From: Macrostomum lignano | Taxonomy: Eukaryota | DNA: 64,000 bases | NCBI GenBank assembly: GCA_002269645.1 | Contig: NIVC01001433.1 | Location: 201,438 to 265,437, forward strand | Direction of reading: 5' to 3' | Shown: one piece after another, positions 15,563-64,000 of the stretch | How the letters are laid out: every line of letters starts with the position of its first letter | How positions within the stretch are numbered: position 1 is the first letter of the stretch | Program-made: the position numbers and the translations under genes | Notes under the pieces: model-generated | Database searches by the model: none | Seen by the model: the letters and a program-made list of their open reading frames with translations, nothing else | What the model was told of the DNA's origin: nothing

Positions 15563-15639
15563 TTTTTCTCTTGCAATAAACACATGCAACAAATAGATAG
15601 ATACATGTTGATAACATGTCAATAAATGGATTTACTATC

Positions 15640-36125: not shown

Positions 36126-36162
36126 AGGCTACGATATCGGCTTCTTTTTAATTCTACATGTA

Positions 36163-41175: not shown

Positions 41176-41869
41176 ATGACATGACAGCAACGCTTGTATC
41201 ATTTGCGTTCCCACAGCAGCAGCAGCAGCCGCATTCCACTGGTGCACTCGAGCACATCGCGGACACTGAGACCCTGCTGCACCTGTCGCTAATCCAGAGC
41301 AACATCCAGTTTAGCGAGCCGCCGCAGTGCCTGATTCTGCAGATGCCTCGATCTGGGAAGTCATATAAGATGTTCCACCGCATCCTGCCAGTGCTGCAGT
41401 TGAACATCACCAACCTGCTGCCGGACACCGCCAGGGCCTGCAACATCTGCGGCAACTTTGCCACTATCGAGTGCCATCAGTGCTTTCTCAAGCACGACTC
41501 CGGCCGAGACTACACCTATTGCGAACCTTGCTACAATACGTTTGCGGATCACAGAAAAGGGAAAACGCATGAGCCAATCAAGATTAAATATCCTAAGCAT
41601 ATCCTGGAGCAATATCAGAATCCTGGACAGGTGGTTGAAAGTCAGACTGTCATGGATCTGCTGGCTGTTGTCTGTATTTGCACCAGTCACTACGTCTGCT
41701 TCTTGCGGGCCGAGCCCAACCACTGGCTGTTCTTCGATAGCATGGCCGATAGGGAGGGCGGTGAGTTCAGACTAGCTACTCGCCTCAGCATCCTCTCTCT
41801 CTCATCGTCTTGCATTCCATCCCCAATTCCCATTTCATCCCCATCCCCTTGCCATCCCCATTCCATCCC

Positions 41870-43568
41870 AGTAGTAGGGGTAAGCAGGGCGACAGGGCGG
41901 AGATACGAGTAAGAGGCGGGGTAGTAGTGCATTGGGATAGGAGGAGGCCGCCTATCTCTCAACATAAAGATGGTTAACACTGCAGAGATAGGCGGAGAGG
42001 CGGCCTATCTCTTTGTACTTGGAATGGTTAACACTGCAGAGATAGGAGGAGAGGCAGCCTATCTCTTTGTACTTGGGACGGTTAACACTGTAGAGATAGG
42101 AGGAGAGGCAGCCTATCTCTTTGTACTTGGGACGGTTAACACTGTAGAGATAGGAGGAGAGGCAGCCTATCTCTTTGTACTTGGGACGGTTAACACTGCA
42201 GAGATAGGAGGAGAGGCAGCCTATCTCTTTGTACTTGGGACGGTTAACACTGCAGAGATAGGAGGAGAGGCGGCCTATCTCTTTGTACTTGGGACGGTTA
42301 ACACTGTAGAGATAGGAGGAGAGGCGGCCTATCTCTTTGTACTTAATGGGACGGTTAACACTGCAGAGATAGGAGGAGAGGCAGCCTATCTCTTTGTACT
42401 TGGGACGGTTAACACTGCAGAGATAGGAGGAGAGGCGGCCTATCTCTTTGTACTTGGGACGGTTAACACTGCAGAGATAGGAGGAGAGGCGGCCTATCTC
42501 TTTGTACTTGGAATGGTTAACACTGCATAGATAGGAGGAGAGGCGGCCTATCTCTTTGTACTTGGAATGGTTAACACTGTAGAGATAGGAGGAGAGGCGG
42601 CCTATCTCTTTGTACTTGGGACGGTTAACACTGCAGAGATAGGAGGAGAGGCGGCCTATCTCTTTGTACTTGGAATGGTTAACACTGCAGAGATAGGAGG
42701 AGAGGCAGCCTATCTCTTTGTACTTGGGACGGTTAACACTGCAGAGATAGGAGGAGAGGCGGCCTATCTCTTTGTACTTGGAATGGTTAACACTGTAGAG
42801 ATAGGAGGAGAGGCGGCCTATCTCTTTGTACTTGGGACGGTTAACACTGCATAGATAGGAGGGGGCGGCCTATCTCTTTGTACTGGGGACGGTTAACACT
42901 GTAGAGATAGGAGGAGAGGCGGCCTATCTCTTTGTACTTGGGACGGTTAACACTGCATAGATAGGAGGAGAGGCGGCCTATCTCTTTGTACTTGGGACGG
43001 TTAACACTGCATAGATAGGAGGGGAGGCGGCCTATCTCTTTGTACTTGGGACGGTTAACACTGCAGAGATAGGAGGAGAGGCAGCCTATCTCTTTGTACT
43101 TGGGACGGTTAACACTGCAGAGATAAGATGGAGTGGGTTAGTTGAATGAATGCTTAATGTTTCCAGGTACAATATATGGCGTCCAGTAATTGACCCAATA
43201 GACTTATCTATTATCAGTAAGTACACTTAGTAAAGCAACAAAGACCAGCCAGTAAACACTGTACAGTGCATGCAAGAAAAAACAGCTAAATCCAGGCCAA
43301 TCCAGGCCCCAGACAGTTACTCTGCAGCAGCCACCCTTTCTAATTTGTCCAGGTAGTAAAATTGTTTTTTTGTGTGCAAAAGTTAGCCGCCTCCCCTATC
43401 TCTACAGTGTTGAGCATCCCCAGTACAAAGAGATAGGCCGCCTCTCCTCCTATCTCTGCAATGTTAACTGTCTCTATGTTGAGAGATAGGCCGCCTCCTC
43501 CTATCCCAATGCACTACCCCGCCTCCTATCTCCGCCGTGTTGGCCGTGTTCTGCTAACCCCTACTACT
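41870..43568. mobile_element. Mini-Maverick-like element in CYLD copy 2 intron 6, 1699 bp
   Basis: Same AGTAGTAG...CTACTACT termini and CATCCC flanks as in copy 1; longer 54-bp array (41970-43125). Confidence 0.7.
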
Positions 43569-44346
43569 CATCCCCATCCCCATCCCTATGCCACCCCCAT
43601 TTTAACCAGTTCATAAATGATTGAATTTCCAGGCTGCAACGATGGCTACAACATCCCGGAGGTGACCCGCGTCGATGGCCTTGAAGAGTGGCTTCGCGAT
43701 CTTCAAGGCAAGACAGGCAACGCACCGCCTCCAGAACAGGGCAACCGCCTGCTAGAGGATTGCTATCTGTGTTTCTACGGCAATCCAAGATCTGTGCCCT
43801 TCCCTAGCAGCTCCTGAAGTAATATTGAAAACCATATACTTCATTTTAAACGTTTTCGTCTTCTTTGAGATTCAACATCGTTTTTATTTATCAAATTTGC
43901 GATTCTCTCTTTTCTCAGTAAATAATATAATTTGTAAATATTTTTAATAAGAGGAATGCGAAAGCTATTAAAACCAATAACGGAGGATTAAACTCGGAGA
44001 AAAACGGTTCAACTTTCAAAACAAATAAGAGTCTACAATACGAGACAGACGCTTGTATAGAACTTAACTTTAATAATAATTTTAAGTCTGTTGTTACTCC
44101 AGAATCGGCATAAAATACTTTTATATACTACTTGCAGTAGTAAAAAAAGTGGTAGCTTAAGCGCCGGAAGCATATAATGTATACACATACAACGTTTGTA
44201 TTGGACCAAATTGATTAATTTTTAATTAAATGAGTTTTCTTTTCATATATTTCTGGTTGGTGATCTGATGTGTACCATTTATTCCACTGTAATTGCATAT
44301 TTCTACGCCGTCTCACCCAGTGATTAAACGATTTAATGCCATCATC

Positions 44347-45284
44347 CAGGGGCGTCGCCACCGGGGGGACATGCTAATGCTTTGTCATGCCAATGCTCCA
44401 CCCCATCTTGTGACCCGTTATGGAAATCAATAATTTTGCTTACGGGCTCCAAAGCATAGCGCCTGCGGCACCAAAATGAGTGCCTTCGGCGCCAAAATGA
44501 ATGTCTGTGGCGCCAAAATGAATGTCTGTGGTGCCAAAATAAGTGACTGTGGCGCCAAAATGAGTGACTGTGGCGCCAAAATGAGTGACTGTGGTGCCAA
44601 AATAAGTGACTGTGGCGCCAAAATGAGTGACTGTGGCACCAAAATGAGTGACTGTGGCACCATAATGAGTGACTGTGGCGCCAAAATGAGTGACTGTGGC
44701 ACCAAAATGAGTGACTGTGGCGCCAAAATGAGTGACTGTGGCACCAAAATGAGTGACTGTGGCGCCAAAATAAGTGACTGTGGCACCAAAATGAGTGACT
44801 GTGGCACCAAAATGAGTGACTGTGGCGCCAAAATGAGTGACTGTGGCGCCAAAATGAGTGACTGTGGCGCCAAAATGAGTGACTGTGGCGCAAAATAAGT
44901 GACTGTGGCGCAAAAATGAGTGACTGTGGCACCAAAATGAGTGACTGTGGCGCCAAAATAAGTGACTGTGGCGCCAAAATGAGTGACTGTGGCACCAAAA
45001 TGAGTGACTGTGGCGCCAAAATAAGTGACTGTGGCACCAAAATGAGTGACTGTGGCACCAAAATGAGTGACTGTGGCGCCAAAATAAGTGACTGTGGCAC
45101 CAAAATGAGTGACTGTGGCGCCAAAATGAGTGACTACTGCGCCAGAATGAGTGACTGTGGCATCAAAATGAGCGCTGACAACACCAATTCTCAAAATAAT
45201 GTACATGTAGTTATTTAGTCATGTACATGCAGAATTCTTGGCTTTGTCCCCTTCCCCACCATAAAATCCATGGCGACGCCTCCG
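44347..45284. mobile_element. hAT-like MITE with 21-bp minisatellite (duplicate of 32603-33540)
   Basis: Essentially identical at offset 11744. Confidence 0.7.
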
Positions 45285-45989
45285 TCATCATCAATCAATA
45301 AAAAATTATTCAATCGAATGTGATTCTCAATGAAAGTTTTAATTGTTTTGTCTCGATGTTTATTTTTTTCTTAATCCCTATTTATTATCATCATCACACC
45401 TGTAAATGTGTAGAATGTGTAAAATGCTTATCCAGATCGACCCCCTGCTGTGCTGATGCAGAGGGTTTTCTTGCTTTTTTGCAAAAAAAATTAATTCATT
45501 CTGTACTAAAAACAAAACAAAGTGAAATCAACTTTTTAGACAAGCCTGTTATATTTTAAACGAGAAATGTACTCGTATCAGCAAACATTATGACTAAATA
45601 TTATTGAAAACTGAATCGTAGCTTGACTTGTCTTGGCATGTTTTTATTTATCCAGATTAGTACAAGCTGAACCTGGCGACCCACAACAGATGCAATTTTG
45701 TATTTTAAATGTTGGTAATTACTGTATTTCACTTCTAAATCCTTTCAAACTTCACAATGGCAATCCGGCCCGCTCAGCTCTCTTCTCCACAATCTCTCAT
45801 CTCTGCTCTCGTCTTCTATTTCTCTCCTCTCCACTTTTTTATCTTTTTTCTCTTCTCTCCTTCTCTCTCTTGTCCTTCTTCTCCTCTCTTCTCCTTATAT
45901 TCCCTTGCTTCTTCTTTCTCCCTCTGGCCCACAATCATGCGCTAAGTTATCTTGCATTGCATTCCCAATGAGTCTATTTTATTAATTCC

Positions 45990-46880
45990 CATCCCACTGA
46001 TTCCCACCTCACAGCTCCCCATCCCACAGATTCCCATCCCAAAGATTCCCATCCCACATCTCCCATCCCACAGCTCCCCATCCCACAGATTCCCATCCCA
46101 AAGATTCCCATCCCACATCTCCCATCCCACAGCTCCCTATCCCACAGATTCCCATCCCACAGATCCCCATCCCACATCTCCCATCCCACAGATCCCCATC
46201 CCACATCTCCCATCCCACAGATCCCCATCCCCACAGCTCCCCATCCCACAGATTCCCATCCCACAGCCCCCCATCCCACAGATCCCCATCCCAACAGATT
46301 CCCATCCCACAGCCCCCCATCCCACAGATCCCCATCCCACAGATTCCCATCCCACAGCTCCCCATCCCACAGATTCCCATCCCACAGATTCCCATCTCAC
46401 ATCTCCCATCCCACAGCTCCCATCCCACAGATCCCCATCCCACAGATTCCCATCCCACAGATCCCCATCCCACAGATTCCCATCCCACAGATCCCCATCT
46501 CACATCTCCCATCCCACAGCTCCCATCCCACAGATCCCCATCCCACAGATTCCCATCCCACAGATCCCCATCCCACAGCTCCTATCCTACAGATCCCCAT
46601 TCCACAGATTCCCATCCCACAGATCCCCATCCCACAGCTCCCATCCCACAGCTCCCATCCCACAGCTCCCAATCCACACAGCTCCCTATCCCACAGCTCC
46701 CCATCCCACAGATTCCCATCCCACAGATCCCCATCCCACAGATCCCCATCCCACAGATTCCCATCCCACAGCTCCCATCCCACAGCTCCCATCCCACAGC
46801 TCCCAATCCCCACAGCTCCCCATCCCACAGATCCCCACCCCACAGCTCCCATGCCACAGCTCCCCATTCCACAGCTCCCA
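45990..46880. repeat. C-rich CCCCATCCCACAG satellite upstream of CYLD copy 3
   Basis: Near-identical to 34245-35135 with small unit indels. Confidence 0.92.
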
Positions 46881-47550
46881 CAATGCCAGTAGCTCAACTA
46901 CTTCCTGTCCAACAAAAGTTGCATTTATTTTTCAAGTGAATTCAGTACCTATAGATTCAACTTCAAGCGCAAACCAATGCATGCGAAGATTGCTTTTTTA
47001 TCAAGCAATTGATGATGGAAAGTTTGGTAAAAAAGCGCCAGATTGAGCTGCCTAGCGACACAGAAAATCCCGGCAGTTTTAAGTGTTTCATAAATCGGTA
47101 CAAAACGTCTGTCACCGTAAAAATTGGAAACAAAGATCAGATAGAAACAAGGAAGCATCAGATGGATTCTGGCCTATTGTGGCTTATTGCACCTGACAGT
47201 GGAGGTGCAAATCAACTTGCACCATTGTATCGCTCATTGGAGTTCGAATCCTTGTATTGCCAGATGCATCCAGACGATAGAGTGCCTTTAACAGTTGAAC
47301 AGGCCCGGATTTTGCTACCTGTGCCAGTACACAAGCGATTGGATTCTTGTCTTTCGAATAGTTTCCAAGTGGCCCAACGCTGCCAAGTTGGTAGCATCGT
47401 GTCTGTTCGCGATCCGAGTTGTTTTGAGAAGCAAGGTTTGTTTTTTATCTCTGAGTCTGATCAAAGTTTCTTTTTTAATAGGCATACTGGTTCATTTTTT
47501 CGCTCAATTAGATTTCAAGTCAAAAGCATTCTAACTTCATTTAAGTCTGA

Positions 47551-47870
47551 GACAGCGCAGCTCAGCGGTAAACGCGTCGTACTAAATCGTACCACGACCC
47601 CTGGTTCGACTCCTTGCACGGGCACATTCAGAGCTTGTGTTCACTAAAATAGGACAGGGGTTTGTGCGATTTACAGCCATGGAGGCCAGCCCCAAAGGCA
47701 CAGGGAGTGTACATGCCTGACGACTAGAAAGTCAGGGCCACTGTACACCCTGTGTGAGCGTGTGCCTGCCTGCGTAATGTATTGGCGTGCTTGTATGTGC
47801 TCAGGAGTGATCGGAATAGGCAGAATTGCCTCAGTGCTCGTCTACCATAGAGGATAGTCTACTACTATTC
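47551..47870 (+). mobile_element. tRNA-derived SINE (duplicate of 35805-36125)
   Basis: Identical at offset 11746. Confidence 0.65.
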
Positions 47871-47908
47871 TAGGCTACGATATCGGCTTCTTTTTAATTC
47901 TACATGTA

Positions 47909-49061
47909 CGAGGTGTATCCCAAAAGTAAGTTTCCCTCATATGTAACTCGGCACCCAAGAGGCTCAGCTAAGTGCCACGTACGTTGTTGCTTTCTTTTTT
48001 GTCTATGGCCCAACCGCCCTAAACAAGTCGCTAAGTCCTAGCTTGTTCTCGAGCTGCATGGCTGCAACCCAAGCACACAACCTTTGCAACGATGGCCGCG
48101 TCCAGCTCGTTCTCTCGCTATGACGTTCGAAGCATCATCAAGTTTTCTGTGCTGTCTGGAAAATCGACACCAGAGATTCATCAAGAACTCGTGAGAGTCC
48201 TAGGAGAAGCTGCACCAACCATTCAAACGGTCTGGAAGTGGGTGCGAGAAATTCAAGAAGGACAGGACTGCATGGAGGACAAAGAGCGTTCTGGACGACC
48301 AAGGACTGCGACAACGGATTCCAATGCTGATCGCGTGATGGCTTCTGTGAGTGAAGACAACAGAAGGACATGCAGTGAGCTGGAGGAACTCCTCGGCATT
48401 CCCCATGGGACCCAGAGCTGAAGCGGCAGTCAGCGCAGTGGCTTCCGATAGGATCGGCGAGTCCCGAGAAGGTGCGACGCAAGCAAGGCTCATTGAAGGT
48501 GATGCACATCATTTTTTGACATTGACGGGATCATTCTGGACTGGCCCCTGTGCCTGTGGGTACCAAAGTAAATGCTGAGTACTATCGATGGGTGCTTCAA
48601 GAGAAACTGCGACCAGCGATAAGGAAAAAGCGGCCGGGCCTTCTGGAGAGAGGCGTCATATTCCATCACGAAAACGCCCCGGTGCATCGGGCCAGACGGG
48701 TTGAAGAGCTGCTCGGCTCATGGAGCTGGGAAATTCTCCGCCACCCGTGCTACTCGCCTGATTTGGCTCCGGCGGACTTCTATCTGTTCCCGAAGATGAA
48801 AGAGAGCCTTCGTGGCCAGCGTTTCGGATCTGAGGAGCAGGTGAACAACAGCGCTTCATCAGCTCTCCGACATCTGGCGATCGCCGGCTGCAGGCCCGCC
48901 TTTGAAGCGTGGGTGCGTCGCTGGGAAAAGTGCGTTGAGCTTGGCGGCCGATTTGTGGAGTGACAAATACTTTAAGTTGTGGTTTGACAAAGTTTACGTT
49001 TTTTAAAACTAATTGCTCACTGTTGGCAGCTGACCGAAACTTACTTTTGGGATACACCTCT
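47909..49061 (+). mobile_element. mariner transposon, internally deleted (duplicate of 36163-37315)
   Basis: Identical TIRs, TA flanks, deletion and frameshift at offset 11746. Confidence 0.93.
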
Positions 49062-51764
49062 TAATTAATTTGGCTTACCCTTTAAAAATCTGAGTTTAAA
49101 GTCTGGGCGCACTTATTCAAAATATTTGATTTTTAGAGCCACCTCTCTCGGTTAATTGTGAAGTTCGGTTTAAAGGTGTTCTGCCTCGTTTGACAAATCC
49201 GAAAGACCCAGACGGTCTCTATTTTGGTTTTGTCAGCTGCGATCCAAAATTAGATGATGGCCAGCCATTATTAACATCCGTGTTGGCTGACGACACTCGA
49301 CAACTTTTGAATGTGCGCGCAGACGAAGCTCGCGATCGCTGATTGATTCTAGCGGACGCTCGCTGGTTGGAACCGGTTCAAGATTGCCCAGCTGACCAGC
49401 TGTTTAACATTAACGATTGCGTAGTGCTGCAGTTGGACGCCAGACAGAATGAGTACAGGCGGGGCCTGTCATTTTGGTTGGGCAATCGTCATATGTTTGA
49501 AGGCAAACCAGAGTGTTGTCTCATTGTTGAAGAGGCCCATTTGCAGCGAGAGCAAGACTTTGATCGTAAATTGGCAGGTTGGTTGAGTTGCCCTCGATTT
49601 TGCTTAGGATTGAATGACTTAGATAAACCTAGTATCTCGTAAGTTAAATATGTAGAATTGAGTTTCTGCTAGTATTTGTAGGATTAATGCTTTACTTGAC
49701 AGGCCAAAGCTGTACAAATGCTGTATTTGATAATGCAAGGCTGTACAACTGCTGTACTTGATCATGCAAAACTCTACAACTTCGCACCGCTCTTTTTAGA
49801 GAGCCGCGCCAATGCTGGCCAAATTTATCAGCCACCTGCTCAGCCTCTCAACTCATCTGATCCACGTCGCGACGAGGCTCAGGCACTGATGGAGAGTAAA
49901 GGCATTCGAATCGACTCGCATGTCAATTTAACATTCCTGGACAAGGTCGGCATGGTTATGTGGTTCGATTTCATTCCAAACCAAACAGATCTTGTTGTTG
50001 GCGTTGCTCTTGATGACAACGAAGGAGTTGAACGCGAAGGCTACGGGTTCGTGCCTTCTAGTCAAGTGCGAGCCGCGCATCCCAATGTTCAGCCTGATCT
50101 GTGGTTCACCTTTCTGAGCCTGATTGAGCCAGTGCAAAATGCCAATAACCTGGAAGATCGGTCCAGAGGAGCTGAGGCTCTGCCTCACCAATTTGGCAGT
50201 GGCGACTTTGAAACCATTGCGGGTCCAACTGAGCCTCGAATTCGGCTAGGAGACATGGACAGATTGGTCGGTCGCAATCGCGGTGTCCAGGGACATCACA
50301 ACTCTTGTTATCTGGACTCAACGCTATTCGCCATGTTTGCCACCGTTGACGCATTCGATGGCGTCCTAGAGCGGCCTGGTCAGGCTAAAGACATCGATAA
50401 TTATGAAGAAATCAAGAATACTTTGCGCGAAGGTATTGTAAACTGTTTGAGAAGGTGAGCGACACTCCTACCCTGACCTACAGTTGTATATTGTATTTGT
50501 GTTCTCATATTTCTACTACTGTTAACTATTTTTAGAAACAAGTTTGTCAGCGCTAGGCAAGTTCTGAAGCTGCGAAAATGTCTTAACGATCTCGACATCA
50601 TTCCAGGAATGATGGGCGAGGAAAAAGGTGATTTAATATAAGACTAGTCTGCTTTAATCCTCAGACTGGGTCTCTACTCTCCCAGATCCTTAGTCTGGGT
50701 TCCTACTGTTTATCAGATCCCTAGGCTGGGTCCCTACTCCTTCTCAGATCCCTAGGCTGAGTCCCTACTCTCCCATATCCCCAGACTAAGTCCCTACTCT
50801 CCCAGATCCCTAGGCTGGGTCCGTACTCTCTCATCCTTAGTCTGGGTCCCTACTCCTCAGGATTGAGGCTGAGTTCCTACTCTCCCAGATCCCTAGGCTG
50901 AGTCCCTACTCTCCCGGATCTCCTGGCTAAGTCCCTACTCTCCCCGATCTCCAGGCTAAGTCCCTACTCTCCCAGATTTTCACGCTAAGTCCCTACTCTT
51001 CCCGATCTCCAGGCTGAGTCCCTACTCTCCCAGATCTCCAGGCTGAGTCCCTACTCTCCCCGATCTCCAGGCTGAGTCCCTACTCTCCCAGATCCCCAGA
51101 CTAAGTCCCTACTCTCCCAGATCCCCAGACTAAGTCCCTACTCTCCCAGATCCCCAGACTAAGTCCCTACTCTCCCAGATCCCCAGACTAAGTCCCTACT
51201 CTCCCCGATCTCCAGACTAAGTCCCTACTCTCCCAGATCCCCAGACTAAGTCCCTACTCTCCCAGATCCCCAGACTAAGTCCCTTCTCTCCCAGATCCCC
51301 AGTAAACATAAGATACCTTTTTATCCTCATGTCGTTTCAACCCAACCCGCAGACCCCGAGGAGTTCATCAACCTGCTGCTGGACCACGCGCTCCGTCACG
51401 AGCCGTTCATCAAACTGAGCACTGGGCAGAGCTCCCATGTGCTGCAGCTGTTTCTTGATCGGGCCGATTTGCCTTTCGAACAGCAGAAGCAGCAACAGCA
51501 GGTATGTGATCTTTGAACGATAAGAAGATTATAAAAATCTCAGCGAATTCATTATTTTATGTGTATACCGGATATGCAGCAAAAAACTTTCATATAAGTT
51601 TTTATTAATAATCTATTGGCTAAAGGACTAGCAATCACACCGATATTAAACAAGCCTTCTATATAATTGTTTTTTTGACATAAGAAATTTGTGAAACTAA
51701 AATAGCTGTCGCATTCCCTGATATCATCGCTTAGGGATCAGCTTCCCGGCTTTTGAGCAACTCC

Positions 51765-52920
51765 CTCATCAGCCATGGCATCTCAGCAACTCCTCCATTG
51801 AGCCAATTGGCATCTCAGCAACTCCCCATTGAGCCAATTGGCATCTCACCAACTCCCCATTGAGCCAATCGGCATCTCAGCAACTCCCCATTGAGCCAAT
51901 TAGCATCTCAGCAACTCCCCATTGAGCCAATTGGCATCTCAGCAACTCCCCATTGAGCCAATTGGCATCTTAGCAACTCCCATTGAGCCAATTGGTATCT
52001 CAGCAACTCCCCATTGAGCCAATTGGCATCTCAGCAACTCCCCATTGAGCCAATTGGCATCTCAGCAACTCCCCATTGAGCCAATTGGCATCTCAGCAAC
52101 TCCCCATTGAGCCAATTGGCATCTCAGCAACTCCCCATTGAGCCAATTGGCATCTCAGCAACTCCCCATTGAGCCAATTGGCATCTCAGCAACTCCCCAT
52201 TGAGCCAATTGGCATCTCAGCAACTCCCCATTGAGCCAATTGGCATCTCAGCAACTCCCCATTGAGCCAATTGGCATCTCAGCAACTCCCCATTGAGCCA
52301 ATTGGCATCTCAGCAACTCCCCATTGAGCCAATCGGCATCTCAGCAACTCCCCATTGAGCCAATTGGCATCTCAGCAACTCCTCCATTGAGCCAATTGGC
52401 ATCTCACCAACTCCCCATTGAGCCAATCGGCATCTCAGCAACTCCCCATTGAGCCAATTAGCATCTCAGCAACTCCCCATTGAGCCAATTGGCATCTCAG
52501 CAACTCCCCATTGAGCCAATTGGCATCTTAGCAACTCCCCATTGAGCCAATTGGCATCTCAGCAACTCCCCATTGAGCCAATTGGCATCTCAGCAACTCC
52601 CCATTGAGCCAATTGGCATCTCAGCAACTCCCCATTGAGCCAATTGGCATCTCAGCAACTCCCCATTGAGCCAATTGGCATCTCAGCAACTCCCCATTGA
52701 GCCAATTGGCATCTCAGCAACTCCCCATTGAGCCAATTGGCATCTCAGCAACTCCCCATTGAGCCAATTGGCATCTCAGCAACTCCCCATTGAGCCAATT
52801 GGCATCTCAGCAACTCCCCATTGAGCCAATTGGCATCTCAGCAACTCCCCATTGAGCCAATTGGCATCTCAGCAACTCCCCATTGAGCCAATTGACATCT
52901 CAGCAACTCCTCTTTGAGCC
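51765..52920. repeat. 31-bp minisatellite, CYLD copy 3 intron 5
   Basis: Same unit and similar length as 40020-41175. Confidence 0.95.
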
Positions 52921-53614
52921 ATGACATGACAGCAACGCTTGTATCATTTGCGTTCCCACAGCAGCAGCAGCAGCCGCATTCCACTGGTGCACTCGAGCAC
53001 ATCGCGGACACTGAGACCCTGCTGCACCTGTCGCTAATCCAGAGCAACATCCAGTTTAGCGAGCCGCCGCAGTGCCTGATTCTGCAGATGCCTCGATCTG
53101 GGAAGTCATATAAGATGTTCCACCGCATCCTGCCAGTGCTGCAGTTGAACATCACCAACCTGCTGCCGGACACCGCCAGGGCCTGCAACATCTGCGGCAA
53201 CTTTGCCACTATCGAGTGCCATCAGTGCTTTCTCAAGCACGACTCCGGCCGAGACTACACCTATTGCGAACCTTGCTACAATACGTTTGCGGATCACAGA
53301 AAAGGGAAAACGCATGAGCCAATCAAGATTAAATATCCTAAGCATATCCTGGAGCAATATCAGAATCCTGGACAGGTGGTTGAAAGTCAGACTGTCATGG
53401 ATCTGCTGGCTGTTGTCTGTATTTGCACCAGTCACTACGTCTGCTTCTTGCGGGCCGAGCCCAACCACTGGCTGTTCTTCGATAGCATGGCCGATAGGGA
53501 GGGCGGTGAGTTCAGACTAGCTACTCGCCTCAGCATCCTCTCTCTCTCATCGTCTTGCATTCCATCCCCAATTCCCATTTCATCCCCATCCCCTTGCCAT
53601 CCCCATTCCATCCC

Positions 53615-55207
53615 AGTAGTAGGGGTAAGCAGGGCGACAGGGCGGAGATACGAGTAAGAGGCGGGGTAGTAGTGCATTGGGATAGGAGGAGGCCGCCTAT
53701 CTCTCAACATAAAGATGGTTAACACTGCAGAGATAGGCGGAGAGGCGGCCTATCTCTTTGTACTTGGAATGGTTAACACTGCAGAGATAGGAGGAGAGGC
53801 AGCCTATCTCTTTGTACTTGGGACGGTTAACACTGTAGAGATAGGAGGAGAGGCAGCCTATCTCTTTGTACTTGGGACGGTTAACACTGTAGAGATAGGA
53901 GGAGAGGCGGCCTATCTCTTTGTACTTGGGACGGTTAACACTGTAGAGATAGGAGGAGAGGCGGCCTATCTCTTTGTACTTAATGGGACGGTTAACACTG
54001 CAGAGATAGGAGGAGAGGCAGCCTATCTCTTTGTACTTGGGACGGTTAACACTGTAGAGATAGGAGGAGAGGCGGCCTATCTCTTTGTACTTGGGACGGT
54101 TAACACTGCAGAGATAGGAGGAGAGGCGGCCTATCTCTTTGTACTTGGAATGGTTAACACTGCATAGATAGGAGGAGAGGCGGCCTATCTCTTTGTACTT
54201 GGAATGGTTAACACTGTAGAGATAGGAGGAGAGGCGGCCTATCTCTTTGTACTTGGGACGGTTAACACTGCAGAGATAGGAGGAGAGGCGGCCTATCTCT
54301 TTGTACTTGGAATGGTTAACACTGCAGAGATAGGAGGAGAGGCAGCCTATCTCTTTGTACTTGGGACGGTTAACACTGCAGAGATAGGAGGAGAGGCGGC
54401 CTATCTCTTTGTACTTGGAATGGTTAACACTGTAGAGATAGGAGGAGAGGCGGCCTATCTCTTTGTACTTGGGACGGTTAACACTGCATAGATAGGAGGG
54501 GAGGCGGCCTATCTCTTTGTACTGGGGACGGTTAACACTGTAGAGATAGGAGGAGAGGCGGCCTATCTCTTTGTACTTGGACGGTTAACACTGCATAGAT
54601 AGGAGGAGAGGCGGCCTATCTCTTTGTACTTGGGACGGTTAACACTGCATAGATAGGAGGGGAGGCGGCCTATCTCTTTGTACTTGGGACGGTTAACACT
54701 GCAGAGATAGGAGGAGAGGCAGCCTATCTCTTTGTACTTGGGACGGTTAACACTGCAGAGATAAGATGGAGTGGGTTAGTTGAATGAATGCTTAATGTTT
54801 CCAGGTACAATATATGGCGTCCAGTAATTGACCCAATAGACTTATCTATTATCAGTAAGTACACTTAGTAAAGCAACAAAGACCAGCCAGTAAACACTGT
54901 ACAGTGCATGCAAGAAAAAACAGCTAAATCCAGGCCAATCCAGGCCCCAGACAGTTACTCTGCAGCAGCCACCCTTTCTAATTTGTCCAGGTAGTAAAAT
55001 TGTTTTTTTGTGTGCAAAAGTTAGCCGCCTCCCCTATCTCTACAGTGTTGAGCATCCCCAGTACAAAGAGATAGGCCGCCTCTCCTCCTATCTCTGCAAT
55101 GTTAACTGTCTCTATGTTGAGAGATAGGCCGCCTCCTCCTATCCCAATGCACTACCCCGCCTCCTATCTCCGCCGTGTTGGCCTGTGTTCTGCTAACCCC
55201 TACTACT
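53615..55207. mobile_element. Mini-Maverick-like element in CYLD copy 3 intron 6, 1593 bp
   Basis: Same termini and CATCCC flanks; 54-bp array at 53715-54765. Confidence 0.7.
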
Positions 55208-55980: not shown

Positions 55981-57168
55981 CAGGGGCGTCGCCACCGGGG
56001 GGACATGCTAATGCTTTGTCATGCCAATGCTCCACCCCATCTTGTGACCCGTTATGGAAATCAATAATTTTGCTTACGGGCTCCAAAGCATAGCGCCTGC
56101 GGCACCAAAATGAGTGCCTTCGGCGCCAAAATGAATGTCTGTGGCGCCAAAATGAATGTCTGTGGTGCCAAAATAAGTGACTGTGGCGCCAAAATGAGTG
56201 ACTGTGGCGCCAAAATGAGTGACTGTGGTGCCAAAATAAGTGACTGTGGCGCCAAAATGAGTGACTGCGGCACCAAAATGAGTGCCTTCGGCGCCAAAAT
56301 GAATGTCTGTGGCGCCAAAATGAGTGACTGTGGCGACAAAATGAGTGACTGTGGTGCCAAAATAAGTGACTGTGGCACCAAAATAAGTGACTGTGGCACC
56401 AAAATAAGTGACTGTGGCGCCAAAATGAATGACTGTGGCACCAAAATAAGTGACTGTGGCACCAAAATAAATGACTGTGGCGCCAAAATAAGTGACTGTG
56501 GCACCAAAATAAGTGACTGTGGCGCCAAATGAATGACTGTGGCACCAAAATAAGTGACTGTGGCACCAAAATAAATGACTGTGGCGCCAAAATAAGTGAC
56601 TGTGGCACCAAAATAAGTGACTGTGGCGCCAAAATGAATGACTGTGGCACCAAAATAAATGACTGTGCACCAAAATAAATGACTGTGGCGCCAAAATGAA
56701 TGACTGTGGCACCAAAATAAATGACTGTGGCGCCAAAATAAGTGACTGTGGCGCCAAAATGAATGACTGTGGCACCAAAATAAATGACTGTGGCGCCAAA
56801 ATAAGTGACTGTGGCGCCAAAATGAATGACTGTGGCACCAAAATAAATGACTGTGGCGCCAAAATAAGTGACTGTGGCACCAAAATAAGTGACTGTGGCG
56901 CCAAAATGAGCGACTGTGGCCACCAAAAATGAGTGACTGTGGCACAAAATGAGTGACTGTGGCACCAAAATGAGTGACTGTGGCACCAAAATGAGTGACG
57001 TGGTTGGCACCAAAATAAGTGACTACTGCGCCAGAATGAGTGACTGTGGCATCAAAATGAGCGCTGACAACACCAATTCTCAAAATAATGTACATGTAGG
57101 TATTTAGTTATGTACATGCAGAATTCTTGGCTTTGTCCCCCACCGTAAAATCCATGGCGACACCTCCG
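55981..57168. mobile_element. hAT-like MITE with a longer, chimeric 21-bp minisatellite
   Basis: CAGGGGCGTCGCC start and TGGCGACACCTCCG end; the array begins like the other copies and becomes divergent after ~56270. Confidence 0.65.
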
Positions 57169-57944: not shown

Positions 57945-59297
57945 TATTCCCATCCCACAGCTCCCCTTTCCACAGCTCTCCAATCCCACAGCTCCCCATC
58001 TCACAGATCCCCACCCCACAGCTCTCCATCCCACAGCTCCCCATCCCACAGCTCTCTATCCTACAGCTCCCCATCTCACAGATCCCTTTCCACAGCTCTC
58101 CAATCCCACAGCTCCCCAACTCACAGATCCCCATCCCACAGCTCTCCATCCCACATCTCCCCATCTCACAGCTCCCCATCCCACAGCTCTCCATCCCACA
58201 GCTCCCCATCCCACAGCTCCCCTTTCCACAGCTCTCCAATCCCACAGCTCCCCAACTCACAGATCCCCATCCCACAGCTCCCCATCCCACATCTCCCCAT
58301 CCCACAGCTCCCCAACTCACAGATCCCCATCCCACAGCTCTCCATCCCACATCTCCCCATCTCACAGCTCCCCATCCCACAGCTCTCCATCCCACAGCTC
58401 CCCATCCCACAGCTCCCCTTTCCACAGCTCTCCAATCCCACAGCTCCCCAACTCACAGCTCCCCAACTCACAGATCCCCATCCCACATCTCCCCATCTCA
58501 CAGCTCCCCATCCCACAGCTCTCCATCCCACAGCTCCCCATTCCACTGATCCCCATCCCACAGCTCCCCTTTCCACAGCTCCCCATCCCACATCTCCCCA
58601 TGCCACAGATCCCCATCCCACATCTCCCCATGCCACAGATCCCCATGCCACAGCTCCCCATCCCACAGCTCCCCATCCCACAGATCCCCATCCCACACAG
58701 CTCCCATCCCACAGCTCTCCATTCCACAGATCCCCATCCCACATCTCCCCATGCCACAGATCCCCATCCCACATCTCCCCATCCCACAGCTCCCATCCCA
58801 CATCTCCCCATCCCACATCTCCCCATCCCACAGATCCCCATCCCACAGCTCCCCATCCCACAGCTCTCCATCCCACATCTCCCCATCCCACATCTCCCCA
58901 TGCCACAGATCCCCATCCCACATCTCCCCATCCCACAGCTCCCCATCCCACAGATCCCCATCCCACATCTCCCCATCCCACAGATCCCCATCCCACAGCT
59001 CCCCATCCCACAGCTCTCCATCCCACATCTCCCCATCCCACATCTCCCCATGCCACAGATCCCCATCCCACAGCTCCCCATCCGCTCCCCATCCCACAGC
59101 TCCCCATCCCACAGATCCCCATCCCACAGCTCCACATCCCACAGATCCCCATCCCACAGCTCCCCATCCCACAGCTCTCCATCCCACATCTCCCCATCCC
59201 ACATCTCCCCATGCCACAGATCCCCATCCCACAGATCCCCATCCCACAGCTCCACATCCCACAGCTCCCCATCCCACAGATCCCCATCCCACAGATT
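57945..59297. repeat. C-rich CCCCATCCCACAG satellite upstream of CYLD copy 4, ~1.35 kb
   Basis: Longest array; followed by an inverted unit GGGATGGGGATCTGTGGGAT (~59303-59322). Confidence 0.92.
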
Positions 59298-59354: not shown

Positions 59355-61683
59355 ATGGAAAGTTTGGTAAAAGTGCGCCAGATTGAGCTGCCTAGCGACA
59401 CAGAAAATCCCGGCAGTTTTAAGTGTTTCATGAATCGGTACAAAACGTCTGTCACCGTAAAAATTGGAAACAAAGATCCGATAGAAGCAAGGACACATCA
59501 GATGGATTCTGGCTTATTGTGGCTTATTGCACCTGACAGAGGAGGTGCAAATCAACTTGCACCATTGTGTCGCTCATTGGAGTTCGAATCCTTGTTTTGC
59601 CAGATGTATAAAGGCGAAAAAATACCTTTAACAGCTGAAGAAGCCCGGATTTTGCTAGCTGTGCCAATACACAAGCGATACGATTTTTGTGTTTCGAGTA
59701 ATTTTCAATTGGCCCAACGCTTCCAAGTTGGTAGCATCGTGTCTGTTCGCGATCCCAGTTTTGTTGAGAATCTAGGTTAGTTGGTGTCTCTGAGTCTCAA
59801 GTGCTTAAGGTTTCCTTTGCAATAGGAAAACCGGGTAATTTTTCGCTCAGAGTTTGAGTCATTCATTTCGAGGCACGAAATATTGGCTTTGGGGGTTGTC
59901 GTGTGATTCACAGCCATTATGGCCGACCTCCAAGCCACAGACTGTACATGCCTGACGATTTAGAAAGTCAAAGAACCGCTGTACAGCCTGTGTGAGCGTG
60001 TGTATGAGTGCGTGCTTGCGTTAAGGATTGGTACGCTAGTTTGTGTCTGCTCAGGAGTCAGCGGAGTGCTCGTCTACAATATAGCGTTCTTTTTTATTCG
60101 AAATCATTTTGGTTGCCCTTGAAAAATCCGATTTTTTAACTGGCTTACATTATTTGATTTTTTAGAGCCGATAAACTCGTTAAAGTGTGAAGTTCGGTTC
60201 AAAGGTGTTCTGCCTAGCTGGACAAAACCGAAAGACCCAGACGGTCTCTATTTTGGTTTTGTCAGCTGCGATCGCAAAGTAGACGATGGCCAGCCATTGA
60301 TAATATCCGTGTTGCCTGATGACAACACTCGACAACTGTTGAAGGTGCGCCCAGAAGAAGCTCGCGATCGCCGATTGATTCTAGCGGACGCTCGCTGGTT
60401 GGATCAGGTTCAAGATTGCCCAGCTGACCAGCTGTTTAACATTGACGATCGGGTAGTGCTGCAGTTGGACGCCAGACAGAATGAGTACAGGCGGGGCCTG
60501 ATCAAATGGCTGGGTAGACTGGATGCAAACGGACCAAAACATCTGGCTGGCGTGGAGTTTGACCATCGAGTTCCCAATTCGTCATGTTGGTTGGGCAATC
60601 GTCATATGTTTGAAGGCAAACCCGAGTGTTGTCTCATTGTTGAAGAGGCCCATTTGCAGCGAGAGAAAGACTTTGATCGTAGATTGGCAGGTTGGTTGAG
60701 TTGCCCTCGATTTTGCTTAGGATTGAATTACTTAGATTAATAAACCTAGTATCTCGTAAGTTGAATCTATAAAATTGAATTCTGCTAGTATTTAAAGGAT
60801 TAATGCTCTACTTGACAGGCCAAGGCTGTAAAAATGCTGCAATGTTCATATTTTGTAGAGAGCCGCCAAATGCTGGTCAGAGTTATCAGCCGCCTGCGCA
60901 GCCTCTCAACTCGTTTGATCCACGTCGCGACGAGGCGCAGGCACTGATGGAGAGTAAAGGCATTCGAATCGACTCGCATGTCAATTTAACATTCCTGGAC
61001 AAGGTCGGCATGGTTATGTGGTTCGGTTTCATTCCAAACCAAACAGATCTGGTTGTTGGCGTTGCTCTTGATGACAACGAAGGAGTTGAACGCGGAGGCC
61101 ACGGGTTCGTGCCTTCTAGCCAAGTGCGAGCCGTGCATCCAGATGTTCAGCCTGATCTGTGGTTCACCTTTCTGAGCCTGATTGAGCCAGTGCGAAATGC
61201 CAATAACCAGGCCGATCGTCCCAGAGGAGCCGAGGCTCTGCCTCACCAATTTGGCAGTGGTGACTTTGCAACCATTGCGGGTCCAACTGAGCCTCGAATT
61301 CGCCTAGAAGACTTGGACAATTGTCGGTCGCAATCGCGGTGTCCAGGGACATCACAACTCTTGTTATCTGGACTCAACGCTATTCGCCATGTTTGCCACC
61401 GTGGACGCATTCGATGGCGTCCTAGAGCGGCCTGGTCAGGCTAAAGACATCGATAATTATGAGGAAATCAAGAATACTTTGCGCGAAGGTATTGTAAACT
61501 GTTTGAGAAGGTGAGCGACACCTACCCTGACCTACAATTTTATATTGAATTTGTGTTCTCATATATTTCTACCACTGTCAAATGCTTTTAGAAATAAGTT
61601 TGTCAGCGCTAGGCAAGTTCTGAAGCTGCGAAAATGTCTTAACGATCTCGACATCATTCCAGGAATGATGGGCGAAGAAAAAG
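59355..61683 (+). pseudogene. CYLD: CYLD copy 4 (exons 1-4), frameshifted in exon 3 and interrupted by a Maverick in intron 4
   Basis: Exons 59355-59775, 60166-60690 (CAP-Gly intact), 60859-61510, 61592-61683. A 1-nt loss at ~60866 and a 2-nt loss at ~61320 (before the Cys-box) relative to copy 1. Intron 4 homology stops at 61801. Confidence 0.8.
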
Positions 61684-62268
61684 GTGATTTAATATTTAAC
61701 GCCTTGTTTCCAATACTAGGCTAGGTCCCTACTCCCCCAGATCCCCAGACTAAGTCCCTACTCTCCCAGATCCCCAGAAAACATGACATACCTTTTTATC
61801 CAGTAGAAGGCATGAGGGGGCTTTTGGGACAAAATTTTTCACGTCCTCCATAATCCCATTAAATCCATCCATATTATCCCCGACAGAATCAGAAAAAAGG
61901 GGGGTCGCACTTACTCCAAAAACTTCGAACATAATCCCATTAAATCCATCCATATTATCCCTGACAGAATCAGAAAAAAAGAGGGAGTCGCACTCGCTCA
62001 CAAAACGTCCTCCATAATCCCATTAAATCCATCCGTATTATCCCCGACAGAATCAGAGCATAACAGGTGTCCTACTTGTTCCGAAAACTTCGAACATAAT
62101 CCCATTATAATCCACTGACATCCACCCATAGCATCTTCGAAACAATCAGAAAATAATCTGAATTCTTCTCCCCACATTCAATCCGCAACGTGCTACCACA
62201 TCCCTAAAACTTTAAATCCCCTAACCCAGGGTCCTTACCCTTTGAAAAAAAATTAAATTTTCTCTAAA

Positions 62269-62505
62269 ATGTTTCCAGTTGTCTCTCCAGGTTCTTATTA
62301 CAAAGCGCACGAGCCTAATTACAAGAGTAAGTACCGATGCAAACTTGAATGCAGCGAGTACATGAGAAAATATTGGCCCGGCGTTGATATCAATGTCCCT
62401 AATATTAATCTAGCTCTCCAAAGACACTGGTTTCATAAGTATGGAGTAGTCATTAACGATTACGACAGCTACTATAACTTTGCAGAAATCATTAGGCAAT
62501 TGTAA
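62269..62505 (+). CDS. 78-aa hypothetical protein inside the Maverick terminus
   Basis: ATG-initiated, non-repetitive Tyr/Lys-rich ORF, convergent with the minor capsid gene; no recognisable family. Confidence 0.35.
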   Translation: MFPVVSPGSYYKAHEPNYKSKYRCKLECSEYMRKYWPGVDINVPNINLALQRHWFHKYGVVINDYDSYYNFAEIIRQL

Positions 62506-62511
62506 TTTTTC

Positions 62512-63380
62512 TCACATTCTCTCAATGATTAACGTCAATACAAACTCTTCACCGTTGAAATCAACACCCACCCCATCTTCAGTCTCAAACTGTAGCACAA
62601 TCTCGTGAATCTCCTTATTACTCAATACAACTCTTTTCACTGGATTTGGTTTCTCTACCAGCATCTGTCCTCCAGCAACAGAGTTAGAGATGTTGTACAA
62701 AATATTCGTTCGCTTTCCCTTAAATACCCAATCAAGACTGATATTACTTTTGATTAGAATATCAAACCCTTTACAATGTCTGCAATATTGGGTGCTAAGA
62801 ACAAACCGCTTACGTTTTCCCGGGCCATGCTAACGGCCCCTGACGCTTGAGTGGCGGTCCGCGCCGCGGATTCTGCCTTATAAACTTTCTTCTCGAATCC
62901 AATTCCCTATACCAAGTGTCATCTATAAACTCAACCTCCGCATCTTTGTGAACTTGCATGACCACTCTCATTACAGTGAGATCATAGGCTAGTTTGACAG
63001 GGAACAGTTTTTTATCTGGCTTTCATATCAGGTGTCTCAAAATGGTCTTTTAGTAAAGACGTTTTCTAGAAAGTAATTGTGGGTATCCACACTTTGCGTG
63101 CTCACAGGGAATACCACAGGTTCTGCTGCTGCACCTTTCCATTTGTAATAAAACTTATTATTTGCTGCCGTCACATTGGGAACGTTTGACCAACCAGTGA
63201 AGTCGTTAAGATAGACATGGTAATTAGCACCTGGATCCAGGCTAATCGCTGCTCTAATTTTTGAACAAATATCCCGTTTGAGTCATTTATTCGCCCAGTT
63301 ATTGTAATAGGAATGCTCTCCTTGGAGTGAGAAACAATATTATTTAGTCTTTCAGCATCGCTTCCATTTTTTTCACCCAA
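62512..63380 (-). pseudogene. Polinton/Maverick minor capsid protein (penton), frameshifted
   Basis: N-terminal reading ISLDPGANYHVYLNDFTGWSNVPNVTAANNKFYY and C-terminal NILYNISNSVAGGQMLVEKPNPVKRVVLSNKEIHEIVLQFETEDGVGVDFNGEEFVLTLII match the Polinton mCP pattern as I recall it. Confidence 0.7.
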
Positions 63381-63393
63381 AAAAAATTTAAAC

Positions 63394-64000
63394 TTTACTG
63401 GATGAATTGTTGATCATGTTAAGCTTCACCTTCCTCTCAAATGCATAGATAATGTACAGGTCCACGGGTGTTGCGGCAGTCCTCTCAATGTTAGTCACGA
63501 TATTCACAGGGTGTTATCAGTAGGGCATTTGTCTGGCAACACATCAGCGCCAAACATCGGATATAGAGTTCCATATTGAAGAGCAGTGATAGCCAATTCC
63601 ATTGTTCTCTTTCACAGCCAAGTCGACCAACTCGCTGTAAAATTTGCTAATCTTGTTCTGACTGAAAATCTCCATTTTGTGGCAGTGCAGGGTAAAGATT
63701 ATCACTGATTTCATGCTGAATGGACGCACGTCTCCATGCATGTAGCGTATAATGCTATTTGGTTTCTCATGTTAATAATAATATACTTGGATTGCTGCAT
63801 GATACCTCTTTAATGCGGATGTTTGTTCTAGTTTCGTTTCGCTCATCTCGACACATGTAGGCCGTGTATGCAACATCAATGTCCTTCTCTATTGCCTTAA
63901 GATAGTCTGCTTTTAGTGCAGTCTTTGGCTCAATGACTTCCAAATACAGCTCGATTCCGGTTAGCTTCACCTCCATCCTTGTGTGATCCGCCCCAGTCCA
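63394..64000 (-). pseudogene. Polinton/Maverick major capsid protein (double jelly-roll), C-terminal part, disrupted
   Basis: Fragments EVKLTGIELYLEVIEP, FSQNKISKFYSELVDL..IGYHCSSIW and the terminal VNIVTNIERTAATPVDLYIIYAFERKVKLNMINNSSSKV*; lies immediately upstream of the mCP gene on the same strand, the usual Polinton arrangement. Confidence 0.6.

What the first reader, a model, noticed from the sequence alone, without database searches (positions are those of the whole stretch)
61796..64000. Virus-like Maverick integrated into the branch/polypyrimidine region of a CYLD intron
Intron 4 homology ends exactly at TTTTTATCC, about 30 bp before the exon-5 acceptor in the other copies, and AGTAG begins. 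Minor and major capsid genes follow. An endogenous dsDNA virus-like element has split an innate-immunity regulator gene. Prediction from the 6-bp TSD rule: the far end reads ...CTACT followed by TTATCC, then the rest of intron 4 and CYLD exons 5-7.
Basis: partly seen in the sequence, partly recalled or inferred. Interest (0 to 1): 0.7.

Follow-up and report, generated by a model that had tools for sequence, protein, structure and literature searches.

The report
Decayed Maverick end in CYLD intron
One end of a mutationally dead Maverick/Polinton-type virus-like element, carrying broken major-capsid and penton genes, sits in an intron of one of four tandem CYLD-like gene copies of what is probably the flatworm Macrostomum lignano; this is an ordinary mobile-element insertion, and its far end lies outside the window.

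Summary
Copy D of a tandemly repeated CYLD-like gene matches its three paralogues up to ...TTTTTATCC (61801). That point is 26-27 nt upstream of the next exon's acceptor in the paralogues. Unrelated DNA starts at 61802 with AGTAGA.

That DNA contains:
- about 470 bp of non-coding sequence, mostly ~82-bp tandem repeats;
- an intact 78-codon ORF;
- on the minus strand, a broken 280-aa-class gene (62512-63367);
- the broken C-terminal half of a 422-aa-class gene (63388-64000, cut by the window end).

An AlphaFold model of the closest intact relative of the first gene matches the mavirus penton best (Foldseek E 1.7e-10), then adenovirus and PBCV-1 pentons. Intact relatives of the second gene pass Pfam's cut-off for the double-jelly-roll-like domain and sit directly upstream of the penton gene on five contigs. 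One relative contig also carries a partial rve integrase and a parvovirus-type PLA2 gene.

The Maverick/adintovirus reading is therefore supported for the capsid module and the terminus motif. DNA polymerase, integrase, the inverted terminus, the TTATCC duplication and CYLD exons 5 onward all lie beyond base 64000 and could not be checked.

The copy is a fossil, with about 10 frameshifts in 1.45 kb. The host copy is one of four and carries its own frameshift. Interest is low to moderate.

The parts
60859..61510 (+). CYLD-like gene, copy D, large exon (CAP-Gly-like region plus USP Cys box). Carries a 2-bp deletion relative to copies A, B and C.
   Evidence: Alignment of the four copies. The copy C equivalent hits PDB 2vhf CYLD at E 1.8e-14. 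Weak CAP_GLY hit, E 0.0011. Splice-site strings located.
61592..61683 (+). CYLD-like copy D, small exon ending ...MMGEEK. This is the last host exon before the junction.
   Evidence: The exon junction is confirmed by the UniRef M. lignano model P0005.
61684..61801 (+). 5' part of the interrupted intron. It includes two units of a 29-bp minisatellite (61718-61778) that is about 20 units long in the paralogues.
61796..61801 (.). TTATCC, the last six host bases. This is the candidate target-site duplication; its second copy cannot be seen in the window.
   Evidence: Sequence read directly. The 6-bp TSD rule is from PMC8097293. Status is inferred only.
61802..62268 (+). Terminal non-coding region of the element. 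It starts AGTAGA. About four copies of an 81-83-bp tandem repeat fill 61812-62156.
   Evidence: Unique in the window. No comparator copy was found for 61802-62352.
62269..62505 (+). Intact 78-codon ORF of unknown function, convergent with the penton gene.
   Evidence: Partly present in the 90%-identical contig L001. No Pfam or PHROG hit.
62512..63367 (-). Penton (minor capsid, single jelly-roll) gene, broken: 4-5 frameshifts and 0-1 in-frame stop, depending on which intact relative is used as guide.
   Evidence: Frame-aware alignment to P0006 and P0150: 60-69% identity over residues 6-280. tblastn. The AlphaFold model of P0006 (pLDDT 80) matches the mavirus penton 6g41/6g42 at E 1.7e-10 and viral minor capsid/penton models.
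63388..64000 (-). C-terminal ~200 codons of a double-jelly-roll-like major capsid gene, broken by 5-6 frameshifts with no stops. The N-terminal half lies beyond the window end.
   Evidence: Frame-aware alignment to residues 219-422 of the 422-aa protein of L003 and to L005: 67-69% identity. Those proteins score 29.3 and 32.3 bits on PF21738 DJR-like_dom, cut-off 27.

Best explanation
This is the left end of an integrated, mutationally dead Maverick/Polinton-type (adintovirus-like) dsDNA element.

Inferred history: an rve-family integrase joined the linear element to a staggered cut at TTATCC in the polypyrimidine tract of an intron of CYLD-like copy D. The insertion point is 26 nt upstream of the acceptor. 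The element end consists of an AGT-type terminal motif and a few hundred bp of repeats. Then come a small ORF and, reading outward towards the terminus, the virion module: the double-jelly-roll major capsid gene followed 20 bp later by the penton gene.

Since insertion, the copy has accumulated about ten frameshifts in the 1.45 kb of capsid coding sequence that is visible. It can no longer make capsid proteins.

For the host, the insertion should separate the likely branch site from the acceptor and disable splicing of this copy. Three paralogues remain and this copy carries its own frameshift, so the effect on the animal is probably nil.

Shown here: the junction, the terminal motif, capsid and penton homology, the decay, and the paralogy. 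Inferred: integrase-mediated insertion, the TSD, the rest of the element and the splicing effect.
For: - Junction exact against three paralogous uninterrupted sites.
- The element starts AGTAGA. Vertebrate Mavericks have 5'-(AGT)2 or (AG)3 end motifs, 6-bp TSDs and TIRs of about 400 bp (PMC8097293). The non-coding terminal region here is 467 bp.
- The penton gene's family of 245-280-aa proteins has 135 members at E<=1e-3. The model of the closest intact relative hits the mavirus penton first, then adenovirus penton base and the PBCV-1 penton. In BFVD it hits polinton-like virus, mavirus, MELD-virus, adomavirus and adintovirus proteins.
- Upstream-gene relatives pass the Pfam DJR-like_dom cut-off. 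The major-capsid-then-penton order is kept in L003, L005, L006, L009 and L010.
- Relative L007 has a partial rve integrase (E 4e-5) and a PLA2 gene (34.1 bits, cut-off 23.9) next to the penton gene. PLA2 genes are typical of alpha-adintovirus virion modules (PMC8502044).
- Intact relatives evolve under purifying selection: pN 0.12-0.27 against pS 0.57-0.91, and dN/dS 0.13 for the one pair whose synonymous sites are not saturated.
- Orthopolintovirales insertions have been reported in rhabditophoran flatworms (bioRxiv 10.1101/2025.04.19.649669).
Against: - No pPolB, integrase, ATPase, protease, second terminus or TSD is visible, because the window ends 2.2 kb into the element.
- No second copy covering 61802-62352 was found, so the claim that 61802 is the true terminus rests on the junction and the end motif alone.
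- The rve hit in L007 is below Pfam's cut-off (24.3 against 32.6 bits) because the gene is cut by the contig end. L007 also has PLA2, not the major capsid gene, upstream of the penton gene.
- The capsid genes read towards the terminus, unlike vertebrate Mavericks, whose modules point inward.
- The major capsid protein family gave no PDB sequence hit, and its structure could not be predicted here.
- Foldseek TM-scores for the penton model are modest (0.36-0.48).
Confidence: 0.7

Rival explanations
1. Truncated fragment or rearrangement breakpoint. Copy D is the partial last unit of the tandem CYLD array. At 61801 it abuts, by deletion or segmental-duplication breakage, a piece of a virus-like element. 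The rest of the intron and exons 5 onward would not follow the element.
For: Only one junction is visible. The array is highly dynamic: B and C are 99.35% identical over 12.35 kb, and satellites vary between copies. Copy D already differs by indels. No comparator exists for 61802-62352.
Against: A random breakpoint would have to coincide with an AGT-type end motif and with the start of a 467-bp non-coding repeat block downstream of the last capsid gene. Host homology ends to the base in all three comparisons.
Confidence: 0.15
2. An integrated relative of another double-jelly-roll virus group (polinton-like virus or other Preplasmiviricota) that lacks pPolB and/or rve integrase. It would be an endogenous viral element but not a Maverick in the strict sense.
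For: The best BFVD fold match is a protein of Tetraselmis viridis virus S1, a polinton-like virus, and many matches are giant-virus minor capsid proteins. The major capsid protein is short (422 aa). Most relatives come from metagenomes on short contigs without hallmark genes.
Against: The host is an animal. There is an rve fragment plus PLA2 next to a 65%-identical penton gene in L007, and PLA2 is described for alpha-adintoviruses. The AGT-type terminus fits. The best solved-structure match is the penton of mavirus, the virophage closest to Mavericks.
Confidence: 0.1
3. Assembly misjoin. The junction at 61801/61802 is an artefact of assembling a repeat-rich, polyploid genome, and the element is not physically in this intron.
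For: If the source is M. lignano, published assemblies are PacBio-based, and the genome is described as hard to assemble and repeat-rich (PMC5730564). The junction lies 23 nt after a minisatellite.
Against: The junction lies in unique intron sequence, not in the satellite. It coincides with a plausible element terminus. Indels between this copy and the independent contig L001 are mostly outside homopolymers (2 of 7), so the sequence does not look error-dominated.
Confidence: 0.05

Closest known systems
Mavericks/Polintons (Orthopolintovirales) of animals, including the proposed adintoviruses
   Same: Integrated in an animal genome. AGT-type terminal motif with a few hundred bp of non-coding terminal repeats. 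A double-jelly-roll-like major capsid gene next to a single-jelly-roll penton gene. Close relatives carry an rve integrase fragment and a parvovirus-type PLA2 gene, as in alpha-adintoviruses. Most genomic copies of this group are degraded fossils, like this one (PMC8097293).
   Different: The hallmark pPolB, integrase, ATPase, protease, TIR pair and TSD are unseen here. The capsid genes read towards the terminus instead of towards the centre as in vertebrate Mavericks. The major capsid protein is short (422 aa). The penton family has no Pfam model or PDB sequence match.
Mavirus (virophage, Lavidaviridae) penton protein, PDB 6g41/6g42
   Same: Best solved-structure match of the modelled penton relative (Foldseek E 1.7e-10, probability 1.00), with similar length (278 against about 300 aa).
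   Different: Only 13% sequence identity and TM about 0.4. Mavirus is a virophage of a protist and its giant virus, not an animal genomic element.
Polinton-like viruses (e.g. Tetraselmis viridis virus S1)
   Same: Best BFVD fold match for the penton (E 4e-13). Small capsid module.
   Different: They have protist or algal hosts and usually lack pPolB and rve integrase. A relative of the present element has an rve fragment.
Orthopolintovirales-related insertions in Rhabditophora reported in bioRxiv 10.1101/2025.04.19.649669
   Same: Same host class (Macrostomum is a rhabditophoran flatworm) and same viral order by inference.
   Different: I could not compare sequences, and that paper does not mention Macrostomum (0 occurrences).

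Membership tests
Maverick/Polinton (Orthopolintovirales) | [quoted passage not shown] | not testable with these tools
   Would lie beyond base 64000. Not present on any related contig fetched (L001-L010).
Maverick/Polinton (Orthopolintovirales) | Retrovirus-like (rve) integrase | tested here: inconclusive
   Not in the window. A 117-aa contig-truncated ORF next to a 65%-identical penton gene in L007 hits PF00665 rve at E 4e-5, 24.3 bits, below the 32.6-bit cut-off.
Maverick/Polinton (Orthopolintovirales) | Double jelly-roll major capsid protein | tested here: met
   Met indirectly. Window 63388-64000(-) is 67-69% identical, frame-aware, to proteins that pass PF21738 DJR-like_dom (29.3 and 32.3 bits, cut-off 27). 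The window fragments alone give no Pfam hit. No structure was predicted.
Maverick/Polinton (Orthopolintovirales) | Single jelly-roll penton (minor capsid) protein | tested here: met
   The model of P0006, 69% identical to the window gene, has pLDDT 80. The top PDB matches are all pentons: mavirus at E 1.7e-10, then adenovirus and PBCV-1.
Maverick/Polinton (Orthopolintovirales) | FtsK/A32-type packaging ATPase and adenain-like cysteine protease | not testable with these tools
   Outside the window and not on the related contigs.
Maverick/Polinton (Orthopolintovirales) | Terminal inverted repeats of some hundred bp | not testable with these tools
   Only one end is in the window. The 467-bp non-coding, repeat-filled terminal region is compatible. 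No inverted copy exists in the window.
Maverick/Polinton (Orthopolintovirales) | 6-bp target-site duplication | not testable with these tools
   Candidate TTATCC at 61796-61801. The second copy would be at the far end.
Maverick/Polinton (Orthopolintovirales) | 5'-AG / (AGT)2-type end motif | tested here: met
   The element starts AGTAGA. The motif is described in PMC8097293. This matches five of the six bases of (AGT)2 and is weak evidence on its own.
Alpha-type adintovirus virion module | Parvovirus VP1-like PLA2 gene in the virion module | tested here: inconclusive
   Absent from the visible 2.2 kb. Present in relative L007 (PF08398, 34.1 bits, cut-off 23.9). The feature is described in PMC8502044.
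CYLD (host gene) | USP-type catalytic domain most similar to CYLD | tested here: met
   Copy C exons hit 2vhf_A (human CYLD USP domain) at E 1.8e-14 (chain residues 3-67) and 7.1e-40 (148-316). The Cys-box string is conserved in all four copies.
CYLD (host gene) | N-terminal CAP-Gly domains | tested here: inconclusive
   PF01302 CAP_GLY at E 0.0011, 19.2 bits, below the 26.5-bit cut-off, in the copy D exon.

The most novel reading that the evidence does not exclude
The fossil belongs to a flatworm-associated adintovirus/Maverick lineage that is still alive. Its relatives have intact major-capsid and penton genes that are deeply diverged (65-70% amino-acid identity, synonymous sites saturated) and under purifying selection. 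They turn up in several independent sequencing data sets. The lineage has an unusually small major capsid protein (422 aa) and a penton family without any curated model. It would be a distinct, unnamed clade of animal dsDNA viruses with both exogenous and endogenous forms.
Probability: 0.3. Interest if true: 0.5.

Novelty: new member of a known kind. Interest (0 to 1): 0.3.

Why it matters
The finding adds a concrete, base-resolved junction of a Maverick/adintovirus-type element in a macrostomid flatworm. This host group has barely been surveyed for such elements: I found no paper linking Macrostomum with Mavericks, and only a 2025-26 preprint reports the order in Rhabditophora.

It also points to a penton family of about 135 detectable members that has no Pfam model. 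That family could serve as a marker for surveying these elements.

The biological consequence for the host is probably small, because the insertion affects one redundant, already damaged paralogue. The finding does not bear on CYLD function or immunity.

Tried and rejected
1. Direct Pfam and PHROGs scans of eight unbroken ORF pieces from the window found nothing.
2. Sequence-profile searches against PDB chains found no meaningful hit for the penton family (A4) or the major capsid family (A7).
3. A Pfam scan of 40 penton-family members gave no shared family; one member hit DUF5901.
4. Attempts to reach the continuation of the scaffold all failed:
   - exact look-up of the 78-aa ORF and of the M. 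lignano UniRef protein P0005: not on record;
   - the terminal 29-mer in JGI metagenome contigs: no match.
5. Attempts to find longer relatives also failed:
   - IMG/VR scans with P0001, A6, P0007, P0018 and P0009 and a JGI metagenome scan with A6 gave no confirmed relative;
   - alignments A3, A4 and A8 were too divergent for the locus finder.
7. I asked whether the 201-aa gene convergent with the penton gene in L008 is the intact form of the window's 78-aa ORF. There is no similarity.
8. I asked whether the frameshifts are long-read homopolymer errors. Only 2 of 7 indels against the 90%-identical contig L001 lie in homopolymer runs, so this is not supported as the main cause. It cannot be excluded without reads.

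Full report
**What is in the sequence.**
The window is eukaryotic and satellite-rich. It holds four tandem copies of one gene: A at about 26.0-33 kb, B at 34.2-45 kb, C at 46.0-57 kb and D from 57.9 kb. B and C are 99.35% identical over 12.35 kb.
- Copy D matches the others at 87-93% identity up to base 61801 (...CCTTTTTATCC) and no further.
- In B and C the next 26 nt, and in A the next 27 nt, end in ...CCCGCAG and are followed by an exon beginning ACCCCGAGGAG.
- From 61802 copy D continues with AGTAGAAGG..., which has no counterpart elsewhere in the window.

The distance to the acceptor is 26-27 nt, not about 30.

**The host gene.**
- The large exon of copy C (49718-50458) hits the solved USP domain of human CYLD (2vhf_A, residues 3-67) at E 1.8e-14.
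- A downstream exon region (52914-53657) hits residues 148-316 of the same chain at E 7.1e-40.
- A CAP-Gly hit is present but sub-threshold.
- The only named relative found is a UniRef 'USP domain-containing protein' of Macrostomum lignano, 100% identical over the part it shares with the copy D exon. The window is therefore probably from that flatworm or a very close relative.
- That gene model joins ...MMGEEK directly to DPEEFINLL....
- Copy D also carries a 2-bp deletion just before the catalytic Cys box that A, B and C lack. Unless this is an assembly error, the hit copy is a damaged paralogue in its own right.

**Anatomy of the inserted DNA (61802-64000).**
- The first 467 bp are non-coding. 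After a 10-nt leader they consist of about four copies of an 81-83-bp tandem repeat.
- An intact 78-codon ORF follows on the plus strand (62269-62505).
- On the minus strand, convergent with that ORF, lies a gene of the 280-aa class (62512-63367).
- Twenty bases upstream of it lies the end of a second gene (63388-64000) that runs off the window.
- Both minus-strand genes are broken. A frame-aware protein-to-DNA alignment against intact relatives counts 4-5 frameshifts and 0-1 stop in the first gene, and 5-6 frameshifts and no stop in the visible part of the second.
- Against an independent, 90.5%-identical metagenomic contig (L001), the window copy differs by 57 substitutions and 7 indels. Only 2 of the indels lie in homopolymer runs. 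The breaks therefore look like real decay and not read error, although reads would be needed to be sure.

**What the two genes are.**
None of the unbroken pieces hits Pfam or PHROGs, and a word-based protein search found only four short metagenomic fragments. A full HMMER profile search of 1.84 billion representatives then found a family of 135 proteins, mostly 245-280 aa long, with the match in their C-terminal half. The closest intact member is P0006 (278 aa), 69% identical to the window gene when aligned frame-aware.
- The family has no Pfam model and no sequence match in the PDB.
- An AlphaFold2 model of P0006 built on 18 relatives (mean pLDDT 80) matches the crystal structure of the mavirus penton protein best (6g41/6g42, E 1.7e-10, probability 1.00). 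About 30 adenovirus penton-base chains and the PBCV-1 penton follow.
- Among predicted viral structures, the best matches are a protein of the polinton-like virus TsV-S1, giant-virus 'minor capsid' proteins, a MELD-virus 'penton capsid protein', the mavirus minor capsid protein, adomavirus LO5 and adintovirus proteins.
- TM-scores are modest (0.36-0.48), but the list is uniform, so I accept the penton assignment.

For the upstream gene:
- The window fragments are 67-69% identical to the C-terminal 200 residues of a 422-aa protein on contig L003 and of its homologue on L005.
- Both proteins pass Pfam's gathering score for PF21738, the double-jelly-roll-like domain (29.3 and 32.3 bits against 27).
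- In five related contigs this gene sits immediately upstream of the penton gene, as it does in the window.

**What kind of element.**
- Contig L007 has a penton gene 65% identical to P0006. Next to it are a parvovirus-VP1-type PLA2 gene (PF08398, 34.1 bits, cut-off 23.9) and, divergently, the first 117 codons of an rve integrase (E 4e-5; below cut-off because the contig ends).
- PLA2 genes are described as characteristic of the alpha-type virion module of adintoviruses, the animal-infecting Maverick-like viruses, which also carry hexon, penton and rve integrase genes (PMC8502044).
[quoted passage not shown] The present element begins AGTAGA and has a 467-bp non-coding terminal block.
- A recent preprint reports Orthopolintovirales-related insertions in rhabditophoran flatworms. 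I found no paper linking Macrostomum with Mavericks or Polintons.

Taken together, the best reading is the left end of an integrated Maverick/adintovirus-type element.

**What could not be shown.**
- The window ends 2.2 kb into the element. DNA polymerase, integrase, ATPase, protease, the second terminus, the TTATCC duplication and the remaining CYLD exons are all out of reach.
- Every route I had to the continuation, or to longer relatives, failed or was exhausted.
- One more distant family member, P0007, sits on a 10.4-kb contig that I could not fetch.
- No other copy covers 61802-62352. That 61802 is the true terminus, and not a truncation point, therefore rests on the clean junction and the end motif.
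- The capsid genes read outward towards the terminus. This differs from the inward-facing modules of vertebrate Mavericks.

**How it most likely works or worked.**
- Inferred from the family: a linear dsDNA element was integrated by its rve integrase with a 6-bp staggered cut at TTATCC. In intact members, protein-primed replication starts from the terminal repeats, and the capsid module builds an icosahedral shell of double-jelly-roll capsomers with pentons at the vertices.
- Shown for relatives: the penton genes of seven contigs are all intact. They differ at 12-27% of non-synonymous sites against 57-91% of synonymous sites, and dN/dS is 0.13 for the one pair whose synonymous sites are not saturated. 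The lineage has therefore been maintained by selection for a working protein.
- Shown for this copy: it is a fossil.
- Inferred for the host: the insertion lies inside the pyrimidine-rich stretch 26 nt from the acceptor. It should separate the probable branch site from the acceptor and abolish normal splicing of copy D. With three other copies present and a separate frameshift in copy D, little phenotypic effect is expected.

**Rivals.**
- A rearrangement or truncation breakpoint instead of a simple insertion (0.15).
- An integrated double-jelly-roll virus of another group without polymerase or integrase (0.10).
- An assembly misjoin (0.05).

Each is decided by reading the downstream scaffold and by reads spanning the junction.

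**Verdict.**
The framing as an element that 'split an innate-immunity regulator' is overstated. This is a new member of a known kind. Interest is low to moderate. What goes beyond a routine insertion is an uncurated penton family and the hint of a living flatworm-associated adintovirus-like lineage.

Noticed in passing
window 26000-61800: At least four tandem CYLD-like gene copies with a unit of about 11.7 kb. B and C are 99.35% identical over 12.35 kb (30679-43017 against 42422-54763), which points to very recent duplication or gene conversion.
   Followed up: partly
window 61300-61340 (copy D, large exon): Copy D has a 2-bp deletion just upstream of the USP Cys box relative to A, B and C, plus a 1-bp difference near the exon's acceptor. 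Copy D is probably a pseudogene independently of the insertion, unless these are assembly errors.
   Followed up: partly
window 48092-48963 (copy C) and the equivalent in copy B (about 36346-37217): A Mos1/mariner-type transposase remnant lies in an intron of copies B and C but not D: HTH_48 at E 2.3e-7 and DDE_3 at E 2.8e-5, split over two ORFs.
   Followed up: partly
window 50650-51300, 39000-39560, 29000-29330, 61718-61778: A 29-bp minisatellite in the interrupted intron has about 20 units in B and C, about 12 in A, and only 2 in copy D.
   Followed up: no
window 34240-35134, 45985-46880, 57946-59296; 41936-43133, 53681-54771; 32719-33428, 44463-45172, 56097-57061; 51756-52936: Several long, strongly strand-skewed minisatellite arrays lie inside and between the gene copies and give long spurious ORFs. 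They account for the GC-skew spikes in the composition profile.
   Followed up: no
window 16000-23400: An AT-rich (30-34% GC), ORF-poor block lies between a DEAD-box helicase-like gene (12649-15622, minus strand) and a J-domain gene (23472-24482). It contains a MITE-like pair of 45-nt inverted repeats at 20215-20259 and 20800-20844.
   Followed up: no
L007 1-1892: This relative has a different gene order from the window: rve integrase fragment (minus), PLA2 gene (plus), penton (plus), with no major capsid gene directly upstream of the penton gene. The family therefore has at least two architectures.
   Followed up: partly
L008 949-1554 (minus); L003 2915-3571: Genes downstream of the penton gene differ between relatives. 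L008 has a Cys-rich 201-aa protein (convergent) and L003 has a 218-aa coiled-coil protein (same strand). Neither resembles the window's 78-aa ORF.
   Followed up: partly
   Followed up: no
protein P0121: A 5954-aa protein contains three short stretches matching the C-terminal part of the penton profile (E 4.2e-4). It may be a chance hit or a captured jelly-roll repeat.
   Followed up: no
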